Virus record (IMG/VR): IMGVR_UViG_3300032242_003291
Location: 186,001-250,000 of that record
Strand: one strand, 5' to 3'
DNA: 64,000 bases
Below, in pieces: positions 28,400 to 57,163 of the stretch. The position numbers were made by a program, and so were the translations under genes. The stretch's first letter is position 1. Each line of letters starts with the position of its first letter. The notes under the pieces were generated by a model, which was not told the origin of the DNA, made no database searches, and saw only the letters and a list, made by a program, of their open reading frames with translations.

Positions 28400-28848
28400 A
28401 TACTATTTTCTTTTATCCATTTTTTCATCCACAATGGTCCATACAAATATAACAACCACCATCCCGAAAAAGATAATCATTGAGTAGTCCATATTATCTT
28501 TTTTTGAATAGGTTAATAAATCCACTTATAGTTGAAAATACCAACACATAGTATAATCCAATTACAATCCATTTAACAATTTCCATAATATAATTTTTAC
28601 AAACATAGTATATTCCACAAAATTTTCCAAAAATTTTTTTTCTCGTTGGGTGAGTATAATAAAAGTGGGGGGTCATGTTCTTAAATAAGTTACCTATTGT
28701 TCTTAACTCAAGAGGTGATGCACTTAAATTGGAAATATATTTCTAAATTATTAAAATTAAATAATGACTTGTTATTTTTTAGGTTGTAAACATATAATAA
28801 TAATTTACAATTGGAAATATGTTTCTAATATTAAGTATATTTATTAGT

Positions 28849-29421
28849 ATGAGTAATTTTTTAATATATGGATTGAGATGTCCAAAAACAGATGACTACA
28901 AATATATCGGTAAAAGTAGTTCAGGATATGAAAGAGCAAAGGCTCACTTAACCTTTTCACATAATAATTCAGTTAATCTTTGGGTGAGTGAATTGAGAGA
29001 AGAAGGACTGTCCCCACTAATTGATGTCCTTGAAGAATGTGATGAAAATAATCTCACAATTAAAGAACAATTTTGGATACAATTTTATGATGATAAAGGA
29101 TGTAAATTAATGAACCACATAAAGTATGATGGTAAAGCAATTCATAAATTGAAACAAGACATTTTAATCGAACAAGAAAAACTTAATAAAGAATTAGAGA
29201 CCGCTAAAAATAATTTACAAGAGTTTTCTAACATTTCTTTATTCATAAAAAAAAGAAGAAAACAATTAAACATAAATCAAATTGACTTATCAGAAATGGT
29301 AGGTATAACTAATAGAACCCTCACCATGATTGAGAATGAAACAGGTAATCCTTCATACTCCACAATTGTATCATTGTTAGATACCCTTGGATACAAATTG
29401 GTCCCAATATTGAAGACATAA
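28849..29421 (+). CDS. GIY-YIG endonuclease with C-terminal XRE/HTH_3 domain
   Basis: LIYGLRCP...YKYIGKS...RAKAH; IKKRRKQLNINQIDLSEMVGITNRTLTMIENETGNPS; TATTTAT at 28838-28844. Confidence 0.85.
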   Translation: MSNFLIYGLRCPKTDDYKYIGKSSSGYERAKAHLTFSHNNSVNLWVSELREEGLSPLIDVLEECDENNLTIKEQFWIQFYDDKGCKLMNHIKYDGKAIHKLKQDILIEQEKLNKELETAKNNLQEFSNISLFIKKRRKQLNINQIDLSEMVGITNRTLTMIENETGNPSYSTIVSLLDTLGYKLVPILKT

Positions 29422-29474: not shown

Positions 29475-29756
29475 CTATTCAGAATCTTCTTCTGACTCCT
29501 CTTCATCTTCGTCCTCATCATCTGAATAAACATCATCCTCTAAATCAGAAACTCTCTCTTCTAAATCATAGATTTTTTCTTTTAACATAGAGATTTCTAA
29601 AGCTGATGAGTTCTCCACTTCATCCTCTTCAGTTTCATCATCAGAAGTTGTTTCTTCTGTTTCTTCCTCAGTTGTTTCTTCGTCAGTTGTGTCAACTGTT
29701 TCTTCAGCCAATTCCTCATCAGCTGGTAATACTTGTTCATCATCTAAATTTAACAT
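29475..29756 (-). CDS. highly acidic protein with short coiled coil
   Basis: Asp/Glu-dominated sequence, LEISMLKEKIYDLEERVSDLE. Confidence 0.7.
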   Translation of the reverse strand: MLNLDDEQVLPADEELAEETVDTTDEETTEEETEETTSDDETEEDEVENSSALEISMLKEKIYDLEERVSDLEDDVYSDDEDEDEEESEEDSE

Positions 29757-31274: not shown

Positions 31275-31736
31275 TTAGAATTGACTAGTTGCACCTGTTG
31301 CACCCCCACCATATTGTGTTTGGTTAGGAGCTCCTCCAGTTGCTTTGTTTGGGTATAATTTATTTTTTAATTGAAGTGCATATGCAATTGCGTTTTGAGA
31401 TGCTTTTTGTGAATTAGGTGAAACATTAAAAGATTTCACACCTTTATTACCTTGATAAAAAACTTCTAGAGTCCATGGATTTCTTGATGGGTCATCTCCA
31501 CAATTTAAAAATACGTTAATACCTGTACTGTGGTTGTTGAAATACATATACTTACAACAAGCATATGGACATTTTTTCCATGTTGTTGCTTTGGACTCAT
31601 CAACCAATTTGAATCCCTCTTTAGTTAATTGAGGTACGATTAATTTATTCCAATAATCGAAATCTTCTTGCTCTTTAATTACTCTATTCACCAAACGAAC
31701 CAAATCGTTTTCTGTTAATCTTATTATTTTACTCAT
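31275..31736 (-). CDS. leader-bearing hypothetical protein
   Basis: MSKIIRLTENDLVRLVNRVIKEQ; TATTTAT at 31752-31758. Confidence 0.8.
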   Translation of the reverse strand: MSKIIRLTENDLVRLVNRVIKEQEDFDYWNKLIVPQLTKEGFKLVDESKATTWKKCPYACCKYMYFNNHSTGINVFLNCGDDPSRNPWTLEVFYQGNKGVKSFNVSPNSQKASQNAIAYALQLKNKLYPNKATGGAPNQTQYGGGATGATSQF

Positions 31737-31809
31737 AAAAAATATTTTATAATAAATATATCGAAAAGGTCATTTTTTTCCCAAAAATTTTTTTTGCGTA
31801 ACTCAAGGT

Positions 31810-32015
31810 ATTATCCCCCCCAAATGACATTCTGACAGTATAGTAAGGGGGGATACGGGGGGAGGGGGGGTGCCTACCCCATGCCAAGGGGGGTATATGG
31901 GGGAGGTAGTTATCCACATTTAGTCCCCACCCCTCCCGTTGTCGGTGTGGATAACAAACACCCCCTCCTGACATGTTGTCTCATAAAAAGTTATCCCCAT
32001 ATGGGATGGGGATAA
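31810..32015. other. candidate replication origin/terminus element: G-run tract plus paired DnaA boxes
   Basis: TTATCCACA at 31910-31918 (+) and 31946-31954 (-); TTATCCCCA pair at 31991-31999 and 32007-32015; multiple G5-G7 runs. Confidence 0.55.
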
Positions 32016-32020
32016 GTTTA

Positions 32021-32052
32021 TTTGGTTGTGTGAAAGCTATGTTGTATCTTTG
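32021..32052 (+). promoter_or_regulatory. Bacteroidota primary-sigma promoter, antisense to 32057..32503
   Basis: TTTG-N20-TATCTTTG. Confidence 0.8.
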
Positions 32053-32056
32053 TAGG

Positions 32057-32503
32057 TTATTCAGGTATGGTGTGAGTGTCCTTGTAGCCAGCGGGGACAA
32101 TCCATCTACCGATAGATAGTCTTCTTGTGCCAGGTAGCTTAAGGTCGTAAGGCATTGCTGCGGACTTATGAATACCTTTGATTGTATCTTCTATCTCGTT
32201 TGTTACTTCTTTGGCGTCTTCGTATGTACATTTGAATCCTGTGGACAGATATGGGGAGTTATATTCTCTACCATGTTCGATAGAACTTACAAGCCAACTT
32301 GCAAGACCCCAACCATATTCATCCTCTATCAAGTAGGGGTCGAAGTAAACGTCAATGAAGATAAGGTTATATTCATTTATTCTATCCTCTTCCACCCCGA
32401 CATCAAGTATCCATGGGTATTCACGTTTCAGCGCTTTAGCTGTAACCTTATACTCATAGTTGTCATATAATTCCTGTGGGGTCATTGGGTCCGATACTGC
32501 CAT
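32057..32503 (-). CDS. hypothetical protein
   Basis: 148-aa ORF. Confidence 0.7.
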   Translation of the reverse strand: MAVSDPMTPQELYDNYEYKVTAKALKREYPWILDVGVEEDRINEYNLIFIDVYFDPYLIEDEYGWGLASWLVSSIEHGREYNSPYLSTGFKCTYEDAKEVTNEIEDTIKGIHKSAAMPYDLKLPGTRRLSIGRWIVPAGYKDTHTIPE

Positions 32504-32546
32504 AATGGTAAAACCACATTTGGTTTAGAATGTGGGGATAACTTCT

Positions 32547-32578
32547 TTTGGTTATATCATAAATACTACATACCTTTG
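32547..32578 (+). promoter_or_regulatory. Bacteroidota primary-sigma promoter
   Basis: TTTG-N20-TACCTTTG. Confidence 0.8.
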
Positions 32579-32682
32579 TATTGTTCGAAGCGGGAGTGTA
32601 GAACGGGCGGGGGCAATGTGTCAGCTGAAGAAATCAGAGGTAGGCTATTTGGTCCCCACCCCAAACAGACGAGGGCGTAATA

Positions 32683-32714
32683 CAAAGGTACGTCTTTTTT
32701 CTGTAACTACCAAA
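32683..32714 (-). promoter_or_regulatory. Bacteroidota primary-sigma promoter convergent with 32547-32578
   Basis: TTTG-N20-TACCTTTG on the minus strand. Confidence 0.8.
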
Positions 32715-32750
32715 TCTTTTTTTCGGGATTATTTCGTATCTTTGTACCCT

Positions 32751-33143
32751 ATGAGACTGACAGATAAGATATATAATATGGACCTATCATACAGGGTGGT
32801 GAACTTGACCATTAAGTGGTGTGAGAAGTTCTTTACTGCTCCACACATTAAAAGACGTAGGGAACTTCTTGTCATGATATATCATTCCCCCACCCATCAG
32901 GTGTTCGGACAATACTGTGATAAGAACCATTGGTTGAGTATTAACATACATAACTGTCCGACAGTTAGGGACCTTATTAAAACTACCATCCATGAATATA
33001 CCCACGTATGTCAGGACCTGAAGGAATATGCTCTTATGAATAAGATGGTGGGGTATGATAAGAATCCTCTTGAAGTCGAAGCAAGATTGAATGAGGACAC
33101 ATACTATAAGAATTGTTGGAGGAGCATTAAATCGAAGCTTTAA
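32751..33143 (+). CDS. small HExxH metallopeptidase-like protein
   Basis: TIHEYTHVCQ...YDKNPLEVEAR; -7 TATCTTTG at 32737-32744; start re-assigned. Confidence 0.7.
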   Translation: MRLTDKIYNMDLSYRVVNLTIKWCEKFFTAPHIKRRRELLVMIYHSPTHQVFGQYCDKNHWLSINIHNCPTVRDLIKTTIHEYTHVCQDLKEYALMNKMVGYDKNPLEVEARLNEDTYYKNCWRSIKSKL

Positions 33144-33387
33144 TTAACTCCTGACACTTAGCCACAATATCCTTGGGAGTAATCTCTTCCCCACCATGGA
33201 CATATAGTCCTTCCACCTTTGCATCCACACAGGCCCATCCATCTAATCCTATGGGTTTCCTTGAGAAGGACCTCTTAGCCTTCTCGAAATATAAGGTCCC
33301 TAACTCCACTTCCCCACCCATCATCGTGACCACGACCCTGATTCTGTCAGGGTCTAACTGTGTTAACTCATAAGATAATTTGTCCAT
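33127..33387 (-). CDS. hypothetical protein
   Basis: MDKLSYEL... start re-assigned. Confidence 0.65.
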   Translation of the reverse strand: MDKLSYELTQLDPDRIRVVVTMMGGEVELGTLYFEKAKRSFSRKPIGLDGWACVDAKVEGLYVHGGEEITPKDIVAKCQELIKASI

Positions 33388-33421
33388 GTGTATAAGTATA
33401 CTTACGGAACACATAAAAATA

Positions 33422-33551
33422 AAGTTATCCACAGGTGGGGAATGGTCCTGACGATATGACAGGGTGGAAAAAAAGTTGGGGATGTGGATAACTTTGGGGG
33501 TAAAATATTTGGATTTGTCAGAATGTCAGGGGACCGTTACGATGGGGATAA
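33422..33551. other. second inverted DnaA-box pair
   Basis: TTATCCACA at 33425-33433 (+) and 33483-33491 (-); TTATCCCCA at 33543-33551 (-). Confidence 0.6.
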
Positions 33552-34161
33552 TCCCTCGACACACTTTTCCCCCACTTTCTACCACTATTGTTTCCCACAT
33601 TTTACCACCGAAATAGTCCCCACGTATATAAAAACACCACTTTTTCCCCTCTGTAGGGGTCTACAGGACCAGTTTTTTACTATATATAAAACCTAGCAAA
33701 AAAAGGAGTAATAAGTGTGAGACGCGGGGAAACGAACGTAGTGAGTGTTTCATGACTATTCAGTCATGGTTTAACCCCCCTTCAAGGAGGGAACCGATAT
33801 GTTTTATTACCTCCAACGAGGTGACAACTCAGTCCCCCACTCGTGGTGGAGACCTGTAGTCTGTGATAATATATCGTGTAAATGTATGATATTTCATTTT
33901 ATCGTGGGAATCCACGATGCTTATATATCATCTCATCCACATATGTAATGTGTCATAAGTAAACTTATAGCTTGACCCGTAGGGATGTTTTGTAAAGTTA
34001 TAGCTTGACACACTATATCACATATTAAAGTCTCTTCATATATGTGGGGAATATATTTGGTGGGGGATGTTCCCGACATGGATGTCGGAGACATATGGAT
34101 ATCCATATTTATCCGCAAATATACGATTGCATATCCGATATTATGTTATACCTTTGTGATT

Positions 34162-55705: not shown

Positions 55706-55716
55706 AAGGCAAAAAA

Positions 55717-56480
55717 GGTTGAGAATACACCAAATTGAGAGAGTCTTTACAGGAGATTATTTTGATTCCTCCGATTTCCACTTCCTTTTGAGAAGTAACT
55801 CTCAGTCACGGTCAATTAGATTAACCAATCCTTAAGTCGTAATATACTCTATTCTTACTCATCACTCTTCGAGGTTGCCACCCCAATTAATCCTTGCGAG
55901 ATTAGAGAACTTTCAAAACAATCGTATCGGGTTTGGGACCCTCTACGGCCATGAACAACTCATGACTAAGTAGTGACCTGTCTACCACGACTGATGAACA
56001 CTTTTCCTTGTATTATTAATTGATTTGTTAGAATCCAAATTTTAACAAAGGTTGTGATTTGTGGATGATAGATGTAGCGGTTCATCAAACCAGCCATCTC
56101 ATCTTTTGAACGAGACGATACTGAACTACACCTTGAAGTCTCCCGACCTCCATATCTCAAGTTTACTTCATAACTCCTACCTTGGTAGGTGAAGAGTAAG
56201 GAGAACAACAGCACCACCTGTACGAACCCATACCTTTCGGTTTTAAGTCTACTCTAATATTGAACTCCGTAATTGTATAGTTGGATGACCATACTTCTTA
56301 CAACAGCTCTACGAGTTATTCTTATTGGAGTTCCCTCCTCAACCAAACGACCCACATCGCTTGGTCACCCAACCACTTTCCCTACAGTGTTACCCTCAGT
56401 ACTAAAGGTCAGATGATATCCCGCTTGTCTACTCGAGCTCCCTTTCGGAAGCCGCAACCGTTCCAATCAAGAACGAATCA
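55717..56480 (-). ncRNA. large structured ncRNA (~760 nt), probably GOLLD class
   Basis: GC-richer tract without credible CDS; own promoter (56626-56657) and boxA-like site; long-range helices 56336-56344/55717-55725 and 56217-56222/55748-55753; next to a tRNA; 5' end approximate. Confidence 0.6.
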
Positions 56481-56625
56481 CTTTATACTACTTTCATAGT
56501 TTATTTTATGGATTATAGACCACCCAATATTTTTATTCAAAGAACTATCAAATTTGAAGGAGAGAGGAAACTTTACGACCAAGTAAACTTGGAACCTTTA
56601 CTACCTCTTTCCTTCATTTGTCTTA

Positions 56626-56657
56626 CAAAGATAAGATTGTTTTTGGAAACAATCAAA
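56626..56657 (-). promoter_or_regulatory. Bacteroidota primary-sigma promoter for the large ncRNA
   Basis: TTTG-N20-TATCTTTG; AGTTCTTTGAA at ~56536-56546 downstream. Confidence 0.85.
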
Positions 56658-56689
56658 TCTTTTAAGAGATTTTTTAACATAATAACTGA

Positions 56690-56770
56690 TTTAGTTATTC
56701 TCCATTGAAGATGTGTTATTCACCTTCAATCACCCCCTACTCGTAATAGGACAGGTTAACTTTCTCTCCG
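56690..56770 (-). ncRNA. small structured RNA of unknown class
   Basis: Own promoter (56806-56837) and boxA-like AGTTCTTTAACA (56771-56782); two hairpins; no ORF. Confidence 0.5.
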
Positions 56771-56805
56771 TGTTAAAGAACTAACAACTCTCGTCGTTTG
56801 TTTTT

Positions 56806-56837
56806 CAAAGATAAGAAGAACTTTTCAATTCGTCAAA
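56806..56837 (-). promoter_or_regulatory. Bacteroidota primary-sigma promoter
   Basis: TTTG-N20-TATCTTTG. Confidence 0.85.
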
Positions 56838-56893
56838 TCTTTTTTTAAAAATAGGGAACCTCGATTTTACGACCATAGTCAACCCATTCTTAG

Positions 56894-56965
56894 TTGCGAG
56901 GGATGGATTCGAACCACCGACCTAAAGGTTATGAGCCTTCCGAGCTACCTCTGCTCTACCTCACG
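56894..56965 (-). tRNA. tRNA-Met(CAT), initiator type
   Basis: Cloverleaf with CAT anticodon, TTCGAAT T-loop, C1:A72 mismatch, A11:U24; no encoded CCA. Confidence 0.92.
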
Positions 56966-56977
56966 ATATATCTTAAT

Positions 56978-57045
56978 GATTACAAACCCACTTCCCCACG
57001 GTCACCTATCCACGTCATGCGCTGGTTGTACCAGCGGGTGTAATC
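56978..57045 (-). ncRNA. tRNA-sized structured RNA of unknown class
   Basis: 7-bp closing stem GATTACA/TGTAATC, internal CGCTGGT/ACCAGCG hairpin, between a boxA-like site and tRNA-Met. Confidence 0.5.
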
Positions 57046-57131
57046 AAATTTATTAAAGAACTATCTCAAAAAGAAGTCCCACAAGCTTCAGTATTTCTCT
57101 CGAATCACACACTCGTGGGACATTTGTTTTA

Positions 57132-57163
57132 CAAAGGTAAGTGATAGTTTTGACACTGTCAAA
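57132..57163 (-). promoter_or_regulatory. Bacteroidota primary-sigma promoter for the tRNA unit
   Basis: TTTG-N20-TACCTTTG; leader hairpin 57077-57120; AGTTCTTTAA at 57053-57062. Confidence 0.85.

What the first reader, a model, noticed from the sequence alone, without database searches (positions are those of the whole stretch)
32021..32744. Convergent perfect promoters around a 104-bp GC-rich non-coding segment
Seen: promoters 32547-32578 (+) and 32683-32714 (-) face each other across 32579-32682. A third (32021-32052, +) points antisense into 32057..32503, and both plus-strand promoters follow a TTATCCCCA box. Known: ColE1-type replicons use overlapping sense/antisense RNAs for primer control. 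Inference: primer RNA/antisense pair or DnaA-regulated transcriptional activation of the origin.
Basis: partly seen in the sequence, partly recalled or inferred. Interest (0 to 1): 0.72.

Follow-up and report, generated by a model that had tools for sequence, protein, structure and literature searches.

The report
Phage small RNA between facing promoters
The GC-rich 104-bp gap is probably the gene for a previously undescribed small RNA, conserved in a group of freshwater jumbo phages, driven by a host-type promoter with a DnaA-box-like site in front, and in this phage read in the opposite direction by the promoter of a neighbouring gene; there is no sign that it is a replication origin.

Summary
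All three sites match the Bacteroidota sigma-A promoter (TTTG, 20 nt, TAnnTTTG): 23 such sites in the window against 4.8 expected. The window lies in a 317-kb freshwater jumbo phage.

The 104-bp gap (53% GC against 32% for the window) is non-coding. It holds an 83-nt element starting at the predicted start site, G32583. I found it in 38 distinct variants in related phage contigs. It has invariant blocks (CGGGAG, ACGGGC, AATCAGARGTAG), moderate compensatory support for hairpins P1 and P2, G-U pairs that fit only the + strand, hairpin insertions and a 3' hairpin. Rfam has no match.

Gene order is conserved: 148-aa gene (-), RNA (+), HExxH peptidase-like gene (+), 86-aa gene (-). TTATCC[A/C]CA boxes flank the cassette in every relative, and one sits 5 nt upstream of the RNA promoter.

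The minus-strand promoter lies inside the RNA's terminator-like hairpin. It should give the 148-aa mRNA a 175-nt leader complementary to the RNA over 96 nt. It is missing in 12 of 37 relatives, so it is an add-on.

Best reading: a stand-alone small RNA, also a cis-antisense partner of the 148-aa leader. Nothing points to an origin. Transcription is predicted, not shown.

The parts
31803..31837 (.). Left arm of a long imperfect inverted repeat that brackets the cassette. It includes the 13-nt perfect repeat TGACATTCTGACA at 31825-31837. The partner is 33516-33559.
   Evidence: the repeat finder pairs I9 and I12. Both arms are conserved in relatives.
31910..32015 (.). Left cluster of four DnaA-box-like 9-mers: 31910 (+), 31946 (-), 31991 (+), 32007 (-). 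The inner pair, 31991-32015, also forms a 10-bp hairpin followed by a T-run on the minus strand, which looks like the terminator of the 148-aa gene.
   Evidence: The terminator-like site is listed. Relatives carry the cluster in the same place.
32021..32052 (+). Consensus Bacteroidota promoter (P-left) with a box 5 nt upstream. The predicted start, 32057, is the last base of the 148-aa gene's stop codon, so its transcript is antisense to the whole gene.
   Evidence: Start-site rule from PMC9723704. Exact in L004, L005 and L052, near-matches in other relatives.
32057..32503 (-). Gene for a conserved 148-aa protein of unknown function. The model is a confident alpha/beta fold with no clear structural relative.
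32504..32678 (-). Predicted 175-nt leader of the 148-aa mRNA. It is complementary to the small RNA over 32583-32678.
   Evidence: Inferred from the promoter position and the -12 to -5 rule. Not shown experimentally.
32533..32541 (-). DnaA-box-like site, TGGGGATAA as read on the + strand, 5 nt upstream of the -33 TTTG of the RNA promoter.
   Evidence: Of 29 variants with a scorable promoter, 25 have an exact TG[T/G]GGATAA at this spacing and 1 has one mismatch.
32547..32578 (+). Promoter of the small RNA. It is nearly invariant among relatives.
32583..32700 (+). Predicted small RNA of about 113-118 nt. The conserved core 32579-32661 scores 106.6 bits with the covariance model. Helices: P1 32583-32586 with 32601-32604; P2 32612-32614 with 32620-32622; P3 32623-32626 with 32643-32646. 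Invariant blocks: 32591-32596, 32603-32608, 32632-32643.
32674..32700 (+). Terminator-like hairpin (32674-32679 paired with 32689-32694) followed by six T (32695-32700). Its loop and 3' arm contain the -7 box of the minus-strand promoter.
32683..32714 (-). Minus-strand consensus promoter facing the RNA promoter. Predicted start 32678. Drives the 148-aa gene.
   Evidence: Present in 25 of 37 variants.
32738..32745 (+). -7 box of the HExxH gene's own promoter, with no canonical -33 in the window. ATG 32751 follows after 5 nt, so the mRNA would be nearly leaderless.
   Evidence: (family D16).
32751..33143 (+). Gene for a 130-aa HExxH protein with weak zincin / SprT-like / DUF3920 / DUF6782 signals.
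33127..33387 (-). Gene for a conserved 86-aa protein of unknown function.
33425..33559 (.). Right cluster of boxes (33425 +, 33483 -, 33543 -) and the right arm of the bracketing inverted repeat (33516-33559). The stretch 33388-33490 is an inverted paralogue of the left box-and-promoter unit.

Best explanation
The segment is the gene for a small non-coding RNA.

Inferred course of events:
- Host RNA polymerase with the Bacteroidota housekeeping sigma factor starts at G32583, from the near-invariant promoter 32547-32578.
- A DnaA-box-like site 5 nt upstream of the -33 element probably modulates that promoter.
- The transcript begins directly with hairpin P1. It continues through a short variable hairpin P2 and a hairpin P3 whose loop carries the invariant AAUCAGARGUAG.
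- It ends at a hairpin plus T-run near 32695-32700, giving an RNA of about 115 nt.

The invariant unpaired blocks suggest a sequence-specific partner, either a protein or a nucleic acid, that is common to the whole phage group.

In this phage and about two thirds of its relatives, a second host-type promoter sits inside the RNA's 3' hairpin and fires the other way, starting at 32678. The 148-aa gene's mRNA then carries a 175-nt leader complementary to the RNA over 96 nt. The two promoters should interfere with each other, and the RNA should pair with that leader and lower or time expression of the 148-aa gene.

Shown here: motifs, conservation, synteny and moderate covariation.
Inferred: the start sites, the 3' end, the antisense effect and DnaA binding.
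For: 1. Promoters and non-coding status are as described.

2. Spread. The element has 38 distinct variants. The covariance model finds it once in the window and in 38 other loci, all freshwater phage-like contigs. There is no credible hit in GTDB species genomes.

3. Conservation. The RNA core is 68-96% identical to relatives in which the three flanking genes are only 55-67% identical at DNA level and 31-49% at protein level.

4. Structure.
- RNAalifold finds P1 de novo on a plain MAFFT alignment. One pair reads UA in 20, CG in 13 and UG in 1 sequence.
- On the model-fitted alignment 93.8% of cells pair, against 27-56% when partners are slid. No shuffle of 500 reaches the covariation score.
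- In the second class, on a plain MAFFT alignment, one P2 pair reads AU in 9 and GC in 5 sequences. There 94.5% of cells pair, against 37-57% slid.
- P2 stems differ in sequence but stay complementary: GGC/GUC, GAC/GUC, GACC/GGUC, GGGAU/GUCCC, GGAG/CUCU, GGGG/CCCU.

5. Strand. Many G-U pairs would be A-C on the other strand, and RNAalifold finds nothing on the minus strand.

6. Hairpin insertions occur at the predicted 5' end (L008, L131) and in the P1 loop (L009, L119).

7. The predicted start site coincides with the first base of P1 (one search rule applied).

8. Every variant examined has some hairpin after P3, although the sequences are unrelated.

9. In the two true metatranscriptome runs, the only part of 31700-34100 found is 32573-32646.
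Against: - Folding energy is no better than shuffles: z is -0.5 for the 104 nt and -1.55 for 146 nt. The structure conservation index is only 0.14.
- Within the window's own sequence class there is no two-sided covariation at all. The compensatory changes come from a few events between classes, and such counts can be inflated by relatedness.
- P3 is almost invariant, so it is untested.
- The RNA-library contigs also cover the promoter and upstream DNA. They could be DNA carry-over or the minus-strand leader, so they prove no start site.
- The terminator hairpin is weak or lacks a T-run in several relatives.
- No target with complementarity above chance exists in the phage genome.
- The facing promoter is absent in 12 of 37 variants, so the antisense role cannot be the element's core function.
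Confidence: 0.58

Rival explanations
1. Origin-linked transcription. The cassette is a phage replication origin that recruits host DnaA through the box clusters. The G-rich + strand transcript forms an R-loop or primer, or opens the DNA. The facing promoter provides antisense copy control, as in ColE1.
For: - DnaA-consensus 9-mers are clustered and conserved on both sides and at the RNA promoter.
- The facing promoters are about 100 bp apart, as in ColE1.
- The non-template strand of the first 68 nt has 27 G against 9 C, with invariant G-runs, a composition that favours R-loops.
- T4-type phages start early replication from promoter-derived R-loops (my own knowledge). This phage has a family-B polymerase and a DnaB-like helicase.
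Against: - There is no GC-skew turn at the locus.
- Replication genes lie 157-192 kb away and the neighbours are accessory enzymes.
- The long transcript of the pair encodes a conserved protein rather than a primer.
- The conserved + strand RNA is followed by a hairpin in all variants.
- The facing promoter is missing in a third of relatives.
- The compensatory changes point to a folded RNA rather than a DNA-RNA hybrid.
- No initiator-like or winged-helix fold was found in the 148-aa or 86-aa models.
Confidence: 0.12
2. A cis-acting leader rather than a free RNA. The element would be a riboswitch-like sensor, or a polymerase-modifying antiterminator like the put RNAs of phage HK022. It would control read-through of the following hairpin into the HExxH gene.
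For: - The order is promoter, then conserved structured element, then hairpin with T-run, then gene on the same strand.
- The HExxH gene follows the element in all relatives except L031.
- The invariant unpaired blocks could form a ligand or polymerase contact surface.
Against: - The HExxH gene has its own promoter directly in front of its ATG. In relatives that lack the facing promoter it is a full consensus promoter.
- The hairpins after the element are unrelated in sequence, and I saw no conserved alternative pairing with the core.
- There is no Rfam riboswitch match.
- L031 keeps the element but lacks the HExxH gene.
Confidence: 0.13
3. A DNA-level element only. The invariant blocks and boxes would be binding sites for proteins (host DnaA or a phage regulator) in a symmetrical control region. 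The apparent hairpins would be by-products, and any transcript would have no function of its own.
For: - The cassette is full of repeated DNA motifs in inverted pairs: the boxes, TGACATTCTGACA and TAGTCCCCAC.
- The thermodynamic signal is weak and the window's class shows no two-sided covariation.
Against: - The near-invariant consensus promoter sits exactly in front, and the predicted start coincides with P1.
- The G-U pairs are strand-asymmetric.
- P2 stems change in sequence yet stay complementary.
- Hairpin insertions are tolerated at two points.
Confidence: 0.1

Closest known systems
P22 sar RNA / ant, plasmid R1 CopA / repA leader, ColE1 RNA I / RNA II (cis-encoded countertranscripts; my own knowledge)
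   Same: A short stem-loop RNA with its own promoter is made opposite to the 5' part of a longer transcript. The two promoters face each other about 100 bp apart, so the RNAs are fully complementary.
   Different: - No sequence or Rfam relationship.
- The overlap covers the distal leader (32583-32678), not the start codon at 32503.
- The long partner is an mRNA for a 148-aa protein of unknown function, not a primer or a known Rep.
- A third of relatives keep the RNA without the facing promoter.
- The large loops carry invariant sequences, unlike typical kissing loops.
Face-to-face pR / pL promoters of coliphage 186 and P2 (transcriptional interference switch; my own knowledge)
   Same: Two strong promoters converge over a short distance inside a small phage control region.
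   Different: No repressor or integrase context was recognised. No helix-turn-helix protein lies in the cassette. There is no evidence that this phage is temperate.
DnaA-box clusters and DnaA-controlled promoters (oriC, datA, B. subtilis DnaA-box clusters, dnaA and nrd promoters, DnaA stimulation of lambda pR; general knowledge, DnaA review PMC5835720 listed)
   Same: Several exact TTATCCACA-type 9-mers lie within 1.6 kb, often in inverted pairs, some directly beside promoters. Their placement is conserved in relatives.
   Different: - They sit in a 317-kb lytic-type phage that has its own helicase and polymerase and no DnaA.
- Binding by DnaA is untested.
- The fixed box-to-promoter spacing of 5 nt has no described counterpart that I know of.
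HK022 put RNAs (cis-acting antiterminator RNAs just downstream of early promoters; my own knowledge)
   Same: A conserved element of about 70-80 nt with stem-loops lies immediately after an early promoter and before a terminator-like hairpin.
   Different: There is only one copy and no sequence similarity. The downstream gene has its own promoter.

Membership tests
Bacteroidota sigma-A promoter | -33 TTTG and -7 TAnnTTTG separated by about 19-21 nt | tested here: met
   All three sites match exactly with a 20-nt spacer. The window has 23 such sites against 4.76 expected. The motif definition and the -12 to -5 position come from PMC9723704.
Bacteroidota sigma-A promoter | Placed directly upstream of transcription units | tested here: met
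   Most of the 47 genome-wide sites lie 4-25 nt before an ATG-started ORF, or before the tRNA and GOLLD RNA genes.
Bacteroidota sigma-A promoter | Mapped transcription start | not testable with these tools
   Only unstranded contigs of RNA libraries were available, and they also cover upstream DNA.
Any Rfam RNA family (including RNAI, CopA, riboswitches) | Covariance-model match | tested here: not met
   No hit at gathering score in the window except GOLLD and tRNA. No hit with E up to 10 inside 32579-32700.
ColE1-type primer / antisense pair | Facing promoters giving complementary 5' regions | tested here: met
   The predicted starts at 32583 (+) and 32678 (-) give a 96-nt overlap.
ColE1-type primer / antisense pair | The long transcript is a non-coding primer ending at an origin | tested here: not met
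   The long transcript runs into a 148-aa ORF that is conserved down to 31% identity.
ColE1-type primer / antisense pair | The antisense arrangement is a constant feature of the family | tested here: not met
   12 of 37 variants lack the minus-strand promoter.
DnaA-dependent origin (oriC-like) | Cluster of consensus DnaA boxes | tested here: met
   Eight of the genome's 15 boxes lie in 1.64 kb, P about 3e-14. Relatives carry 7-12 boxes at the same places.
DnaA-dependent origin (oriC-like) | Strand-composition switch at the origin | tested here: not met
   Cumulative GC skew keeps falling through 215-220 kb of the genome. The minimum is at 305 kb and the maximum at 5 kb. This criterion is weak for phages.
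DnaA-dependent origin (oriC-like) | DnaA binding and origin firing | not testable with these tools
   Needs footprinting or ChIP and replication mapping.
Stand-alone structured small RNA | Base pairs kept by compensatory change | tested here: inconclusive
   Supported between sequence classes and within the second class. Absent within the window's own class. Folding energy is not above shuffles.
Stand-alone structured small RNA | Own promoter and own 3' end signal | tested here: met
   The promoter is invariant. The window has a hairpin plus six T, and relatives have some hairpin of varying quality. These are predictions, not mapped ends.
ImmA/IrrE (Peptidase_M78) or SprT-like zincin, for the HExxH gene | Profile match above the family threshold | tested here: not met
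   Only sub-threshold hits: DUF3920 in 12 of 18 family members, DUF6782 in 8, SprT-like in 5, M78 in 1. The HExxH motif is nearly invariant.

The most novel reading that the evidence does not exclude
The whole 2.3-kb cassette would be a device by which a jumbo phage reads or hijacks the host replication initiator. It comprises two inverted box-and-promoter arms, a central box-promoter-RNA unit, an HExxH SprT-like peptidase and two unknown small proteins. Host DnaA bound at the boxes would switch on the small RNA and the antisense transcripts, coupling phage early expression to the host's replication state. Alternatively, the multiplied boxes would soak up DnaA and shut down host initiation. 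The small RNA would be the conserved effector.
Probability: 0.15. Interest if true: 0.8.

Novelty: new variant of a known kind. Interest (0 to 1): 0.55.

Why it matters
Very few non-coding RNAs of jumbo phages, or of phages infecting Bacteroidota, have been described. This one is better conserved than the proteins around it, so it must do something that matters to the phage.

Its promoter carries a DnaA-consensus site at a fixed distance, and the cassette is bracketed by conserved box clusters. If these bind host DnaA, this would be a direct link between the host's replication initiator and phage early gene control.

The element is short, has clear invariant blocks and has natural variants. 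That makes it easy to test once a host or a surrogate such as Flavobacterium johnsoniae is available.

For annotation there are two practical points. The 203-aa ORF 32532-33143 that spans the gap is an over-extension, and the real gene starts at 32751.

Tried and rejected
- E. coli-type promoter scan: it does not see the three sites, because the motif is the Bacteroidota one.
- Phage GenBank collection by blastn: no match.
- Protein-seeded scans of IMG/VR with the 148-aa and HExxH proteins: nothing. Relatives came from the large protein database and from DNA patterns instead.
- Coding reading of the gap (ORF from 32532 or ATG 32616): rejected, because the frame is not kept in relatives.
- Hammerhead-like CUGANGA and Shine-Dalgarno-like GAGGU in the P3 loop: rejected, because neither is conserved in the second sequence class.
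- Alternative hairpin CUGA/UCAG in place of P3: kept only in one class.
- Long-range G-run/C-run helix closing P2 and P3: possible in the window, but the C-run is missing in several relatives.
- Trans targets in the phage genome: complementarity of at most 12 nt, at chance level.
- Bacterial homologues of the RNA: nine pattern hits in GTDB genomes, none confirmed by the model. One weak hit in a gut contig (L028, 18.8 bits) is probably false.
- Phage-encoded DnaA: none.
- Folds of the 148-aa and 86-aa proteins: good or fair models, but no convincing structural relative. Foldseek E is at least 0.09. The best VIA Z is 5.6, and KH-like rows at Z 4-5 are within noise.
- ESM Atlas look-ups: only viral hypothetical clusters.
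- HExxH profile against the PDB: nothing.
- Metatranscriptome contigs: they show presence, not strand or ends.
- Mobile-element or invertible-segment reading of the bracketing inverted repeat: the orientation and flanks are the same in every relative whose contig reaches the flank, and no recombinase is nearby. It was therefore not pursued.
- Complex prediction was not used. It gives no verdict for protein with DNA or RNA.

Full report
SOURCE
The window is bases 186001-250000 of a 317,259-bp IMG/VR virus record that CheckV rates complete. It is 32% G+C. It carries a GOLLD RNA and a tRNA-Met. It has its own DnaB-like helicase and family-B DNA polymerase and no DnaA. Near-identical and related DNA occurs only in freshwater and lake metagenomes. 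The GenBank phage collection holds nothing similar.

THE OBSERVATION
The three "perfect promoters" are exact matches to TTTG-N20-TAnnTTTG at the stated coordinates. This is the housekeeping promoter of Bacteroidota, with the -7 box at -12 to -5 (PMC9723704). That also points to the host phylum. The motif is strongly enriched: 23 sites in the window against 4.76 expected, and no shuffle reaches 23. Of the 47 sites in the genome, most lie a few bases before an ATG-started ORF or before the tRNA and GOLLD genes.

The two facing promoters stand out because the nearest ORFs are 172-199 nt away. The gap between them is 52.9% G+C and G-rich on the + strand.

WHAT LIES IN THE GAP
An ORF from 32532 spans it. 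Homologues of the neighbouring 148-aa protein led to ten related loci. In these the upstream part of that frame is broken, while the DNA stays highly conserved. The true gene starts at ATG 32751, five bases after its own -7 box.

The stretch directly after the + promoter has three invariant blocks: CGGGAG, ACGGGC and AATCAGARGTAG. A pattern built from them found 8 more IMG/VR loci, mostly from contigs of about 320 kb, and many metagenome loci. In total there are 38 distinct variants. The genome has one copy.

A covariance model built from 18 of the variants scores the window at 106.6 bits over 32579-32661. It finds the element in 38 other loci. It finds nothing credible in pattern-matched stretches of 185,579 bacterial and archaeal species genomes. 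Rfam has no match.

IS IT A STRUCTURED RNA, AND ON WHICH STRAND?
In favour:
- RNAalifold finds helix P1 on a plain MAFFT alignment. One pair switches between U-A (20 sequences) and C-G (13).
- P2 is a 3-5-bp hairpin whose stem sequence differs among lineages but always pairs. Within the second sequence class one pair is A-U in 9 and G-C in 5 sequences, on a plain alignment.
- On the model-fitted alignment 93.8% of cells pair, against 27-56% for slid partners. No shuffle of 500 reaches the covariation score.
- Frequent G-U pairs fit only the + strand, and the minus strand gives no consensus fold.
- Two kinds of extra hairpin are tolerated. One is exactly at the predicted 5' end and one is in the P1 loop.
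- The predicted start, G32583, is the first base of P1.
- Unrelated hairpins follow P3 in all variants examined.
- The core is more conserved (68-96% identity) than the flanking genes (55-67%).

Against:
- Folding energy is no better than shuffled sequence. The structure conservation index is 0.14.
- The window's own class shows only one-sided changes.
- P3 is nearly invariant.
- The compensatory events are few.

I put about 0.7 on a functional folded + strand RNA.

THE FACING PROMOTER
In the window the RNA should end at a hairpin (32674-32679 paired with 32689-32694) plus six T. The loop and 3' arm of that hairpin are the -7 box of the minus-strand promoter, whose predicted start is 32678. 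The minus transcript runs 175 nt to ATG 32503 of the 148-aa gene and is complementary to the RNA over 96 nt.

This is the geometry of countertranscript control, as in P22 sar/ant, R1 CopA and ColE1 RNA I/II, and of convergent-promoter interference, as in coliphage 186 (my own knowledge). However, only 25 of 37 variants have this promoter. The others go from the RNA's 3' hairpin straight into a consensus promoter for the HExxH gene. So the RNA is the conserved unit and the facing promoter is a lineage-specific addition.

The third promoter (32021-32052) is conserved. It would start at the stop codon of the 148-aa gene and read antisense through the whole gene.

THE SURROUNDINGS
The gene order is 148-aa gene (-), RNA (+), HExxH gene (+), 86-aa gene (-). 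It is kept down to 31-49% protein identity.

TTATCC[A/C]CA, the DnaA-box consensus, occurs 15 times in the genome. Eight of these lie between 31910 and 33551, with Poisson P about 3e-14. Every relative has the same layout: a left cluster, one box before the RNA promoter and a right cluster, 7-12 boxes in all, mostly the perfect TTATCCACA.

The left and right non-coding arms are inverted paralogues. Each has a box, a CCTGACATGTTGTC-like block, another box and an inward-facing promoter. They are bracketed by a longer inverted repeat that includes a perfect 13-mer. One inverted box pair doubles as the terminator-like hairpin of the 148-aa gene.

The 148-aa model is confident (pLDDT 91.6) and the 86-aa model is fair (79). 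Neither shows a recognisable DNA-binding fold or any convincing structural relative. The HExxH protein gives only sub-threshold zincin, SprT-like, DUF3920 and DUF6782 signals. Since no phage candidate for box binding emerged, host DnaA is the simplest candidate. This is inference from the sequence match alone.

ORIGIN OR NOT
Nothing tested points to an origin here:
- The GC skew does not turn at the locus.
- The neighbours are glycosyltransferases, a UDP-galactopyranose mutase, a BKACE enzyme and a phosphoesterase.
- The replication genes are far away.
- The long member of the RNA pair encodes a protein.

These are weak tests for a phage. The box clusters and the G-rich transcript keep the idea alive at roughly 0.1.

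EXPRESSION DATA
Two true metatranscriptome runs contain, out of 31700-34100, only 32573-32646, with two differences. This fits the extreme conservation of the core. Their contigs also extend upstream of the promoter and are unstranded, so they prove neither a start site nor a strand.

VERDICT
- The primer and origin part is unsupported.
- Best explanation: a previously undescribed small RNA gene with a box-linked host-type promoter. In this phage it is also the cis-antisense partner of the 148-aa gene's leader. It sits inside a conserved, symmetrical, box-rich control cassette of unknown purpose.

Noticed in passing
window 55716-57163 (-): A full-length GOLLD RNA (325 bits) and a tRNA-Met lie here. 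Three consensus promoters with no ORF behind them sit at 56626, 56806 and 57132. There may be further non-coding transcripts between them.
   Followed up: no
window 31845-31906: A conserved block of long G-runs (G6, G6, G7, then G6 and G5) with an embedded G-run/C-run hairpin whose loop varies among relatives. It could form a G-quadruplex or another structured RNA. The block is nearly invariant in 12 relatives.
   Followed up: partly
window 33433-34040: About 600 nt of non-coding DNA conserved block by block in relatives. It contains a + strand terminator-like hairpin at 33650-33680 whose stem covaries among relatives, an AT-rich stretch, and two 18-nt direct repeats at 33959 and 33992. It may hold more RNAs or protein-binding sites.
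   Followed up: partly
window 31803-31837 with 33516-33559: A long imperfect inverted repeat brackets the whole 1.7-kb cassette. One low-confidence contig joint in run X24 skips 31795-33635. This may be a relative without the cassette or with a diverged one.
   Followed up: no
whole genome; examples at window 1044, 32738, 63822: Many genes start 4-7 nt after the -7 box, so their mRNAs would be leaderless or nearly so. In Flavobacterium psychrophilum only 5.5% of the mRNAs examined are leaderless (PMC9723704).
   Followed up: partly
L009 989-1094 and L119 667-772: The same 23-nt hairpin insertion sits in the P1 loop of two variants that belong to different core classes. Variants such as L113 and L088 mix class-specific parts. 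This suggests recombination within the RNA gene.
   Followed up: no
window 29475-29756 (-): A 93-aa protein made largely of Asp, Glu and Thr runs. It could be a DNA mimic or an otherwise unusual acidic protein.
   Followed up: no
window 28819-29421 (+): A 200-aa protein with a C-terminal Xre-type helix-turn-helix domain and a weak N-terminal GIY-YIG signal.
   Followed up: no
genome 1-5000, 255001-260000, 315001-317259: Three segments of 42-46% G+C in a genome of about 32% G+C.
   Followed up: no
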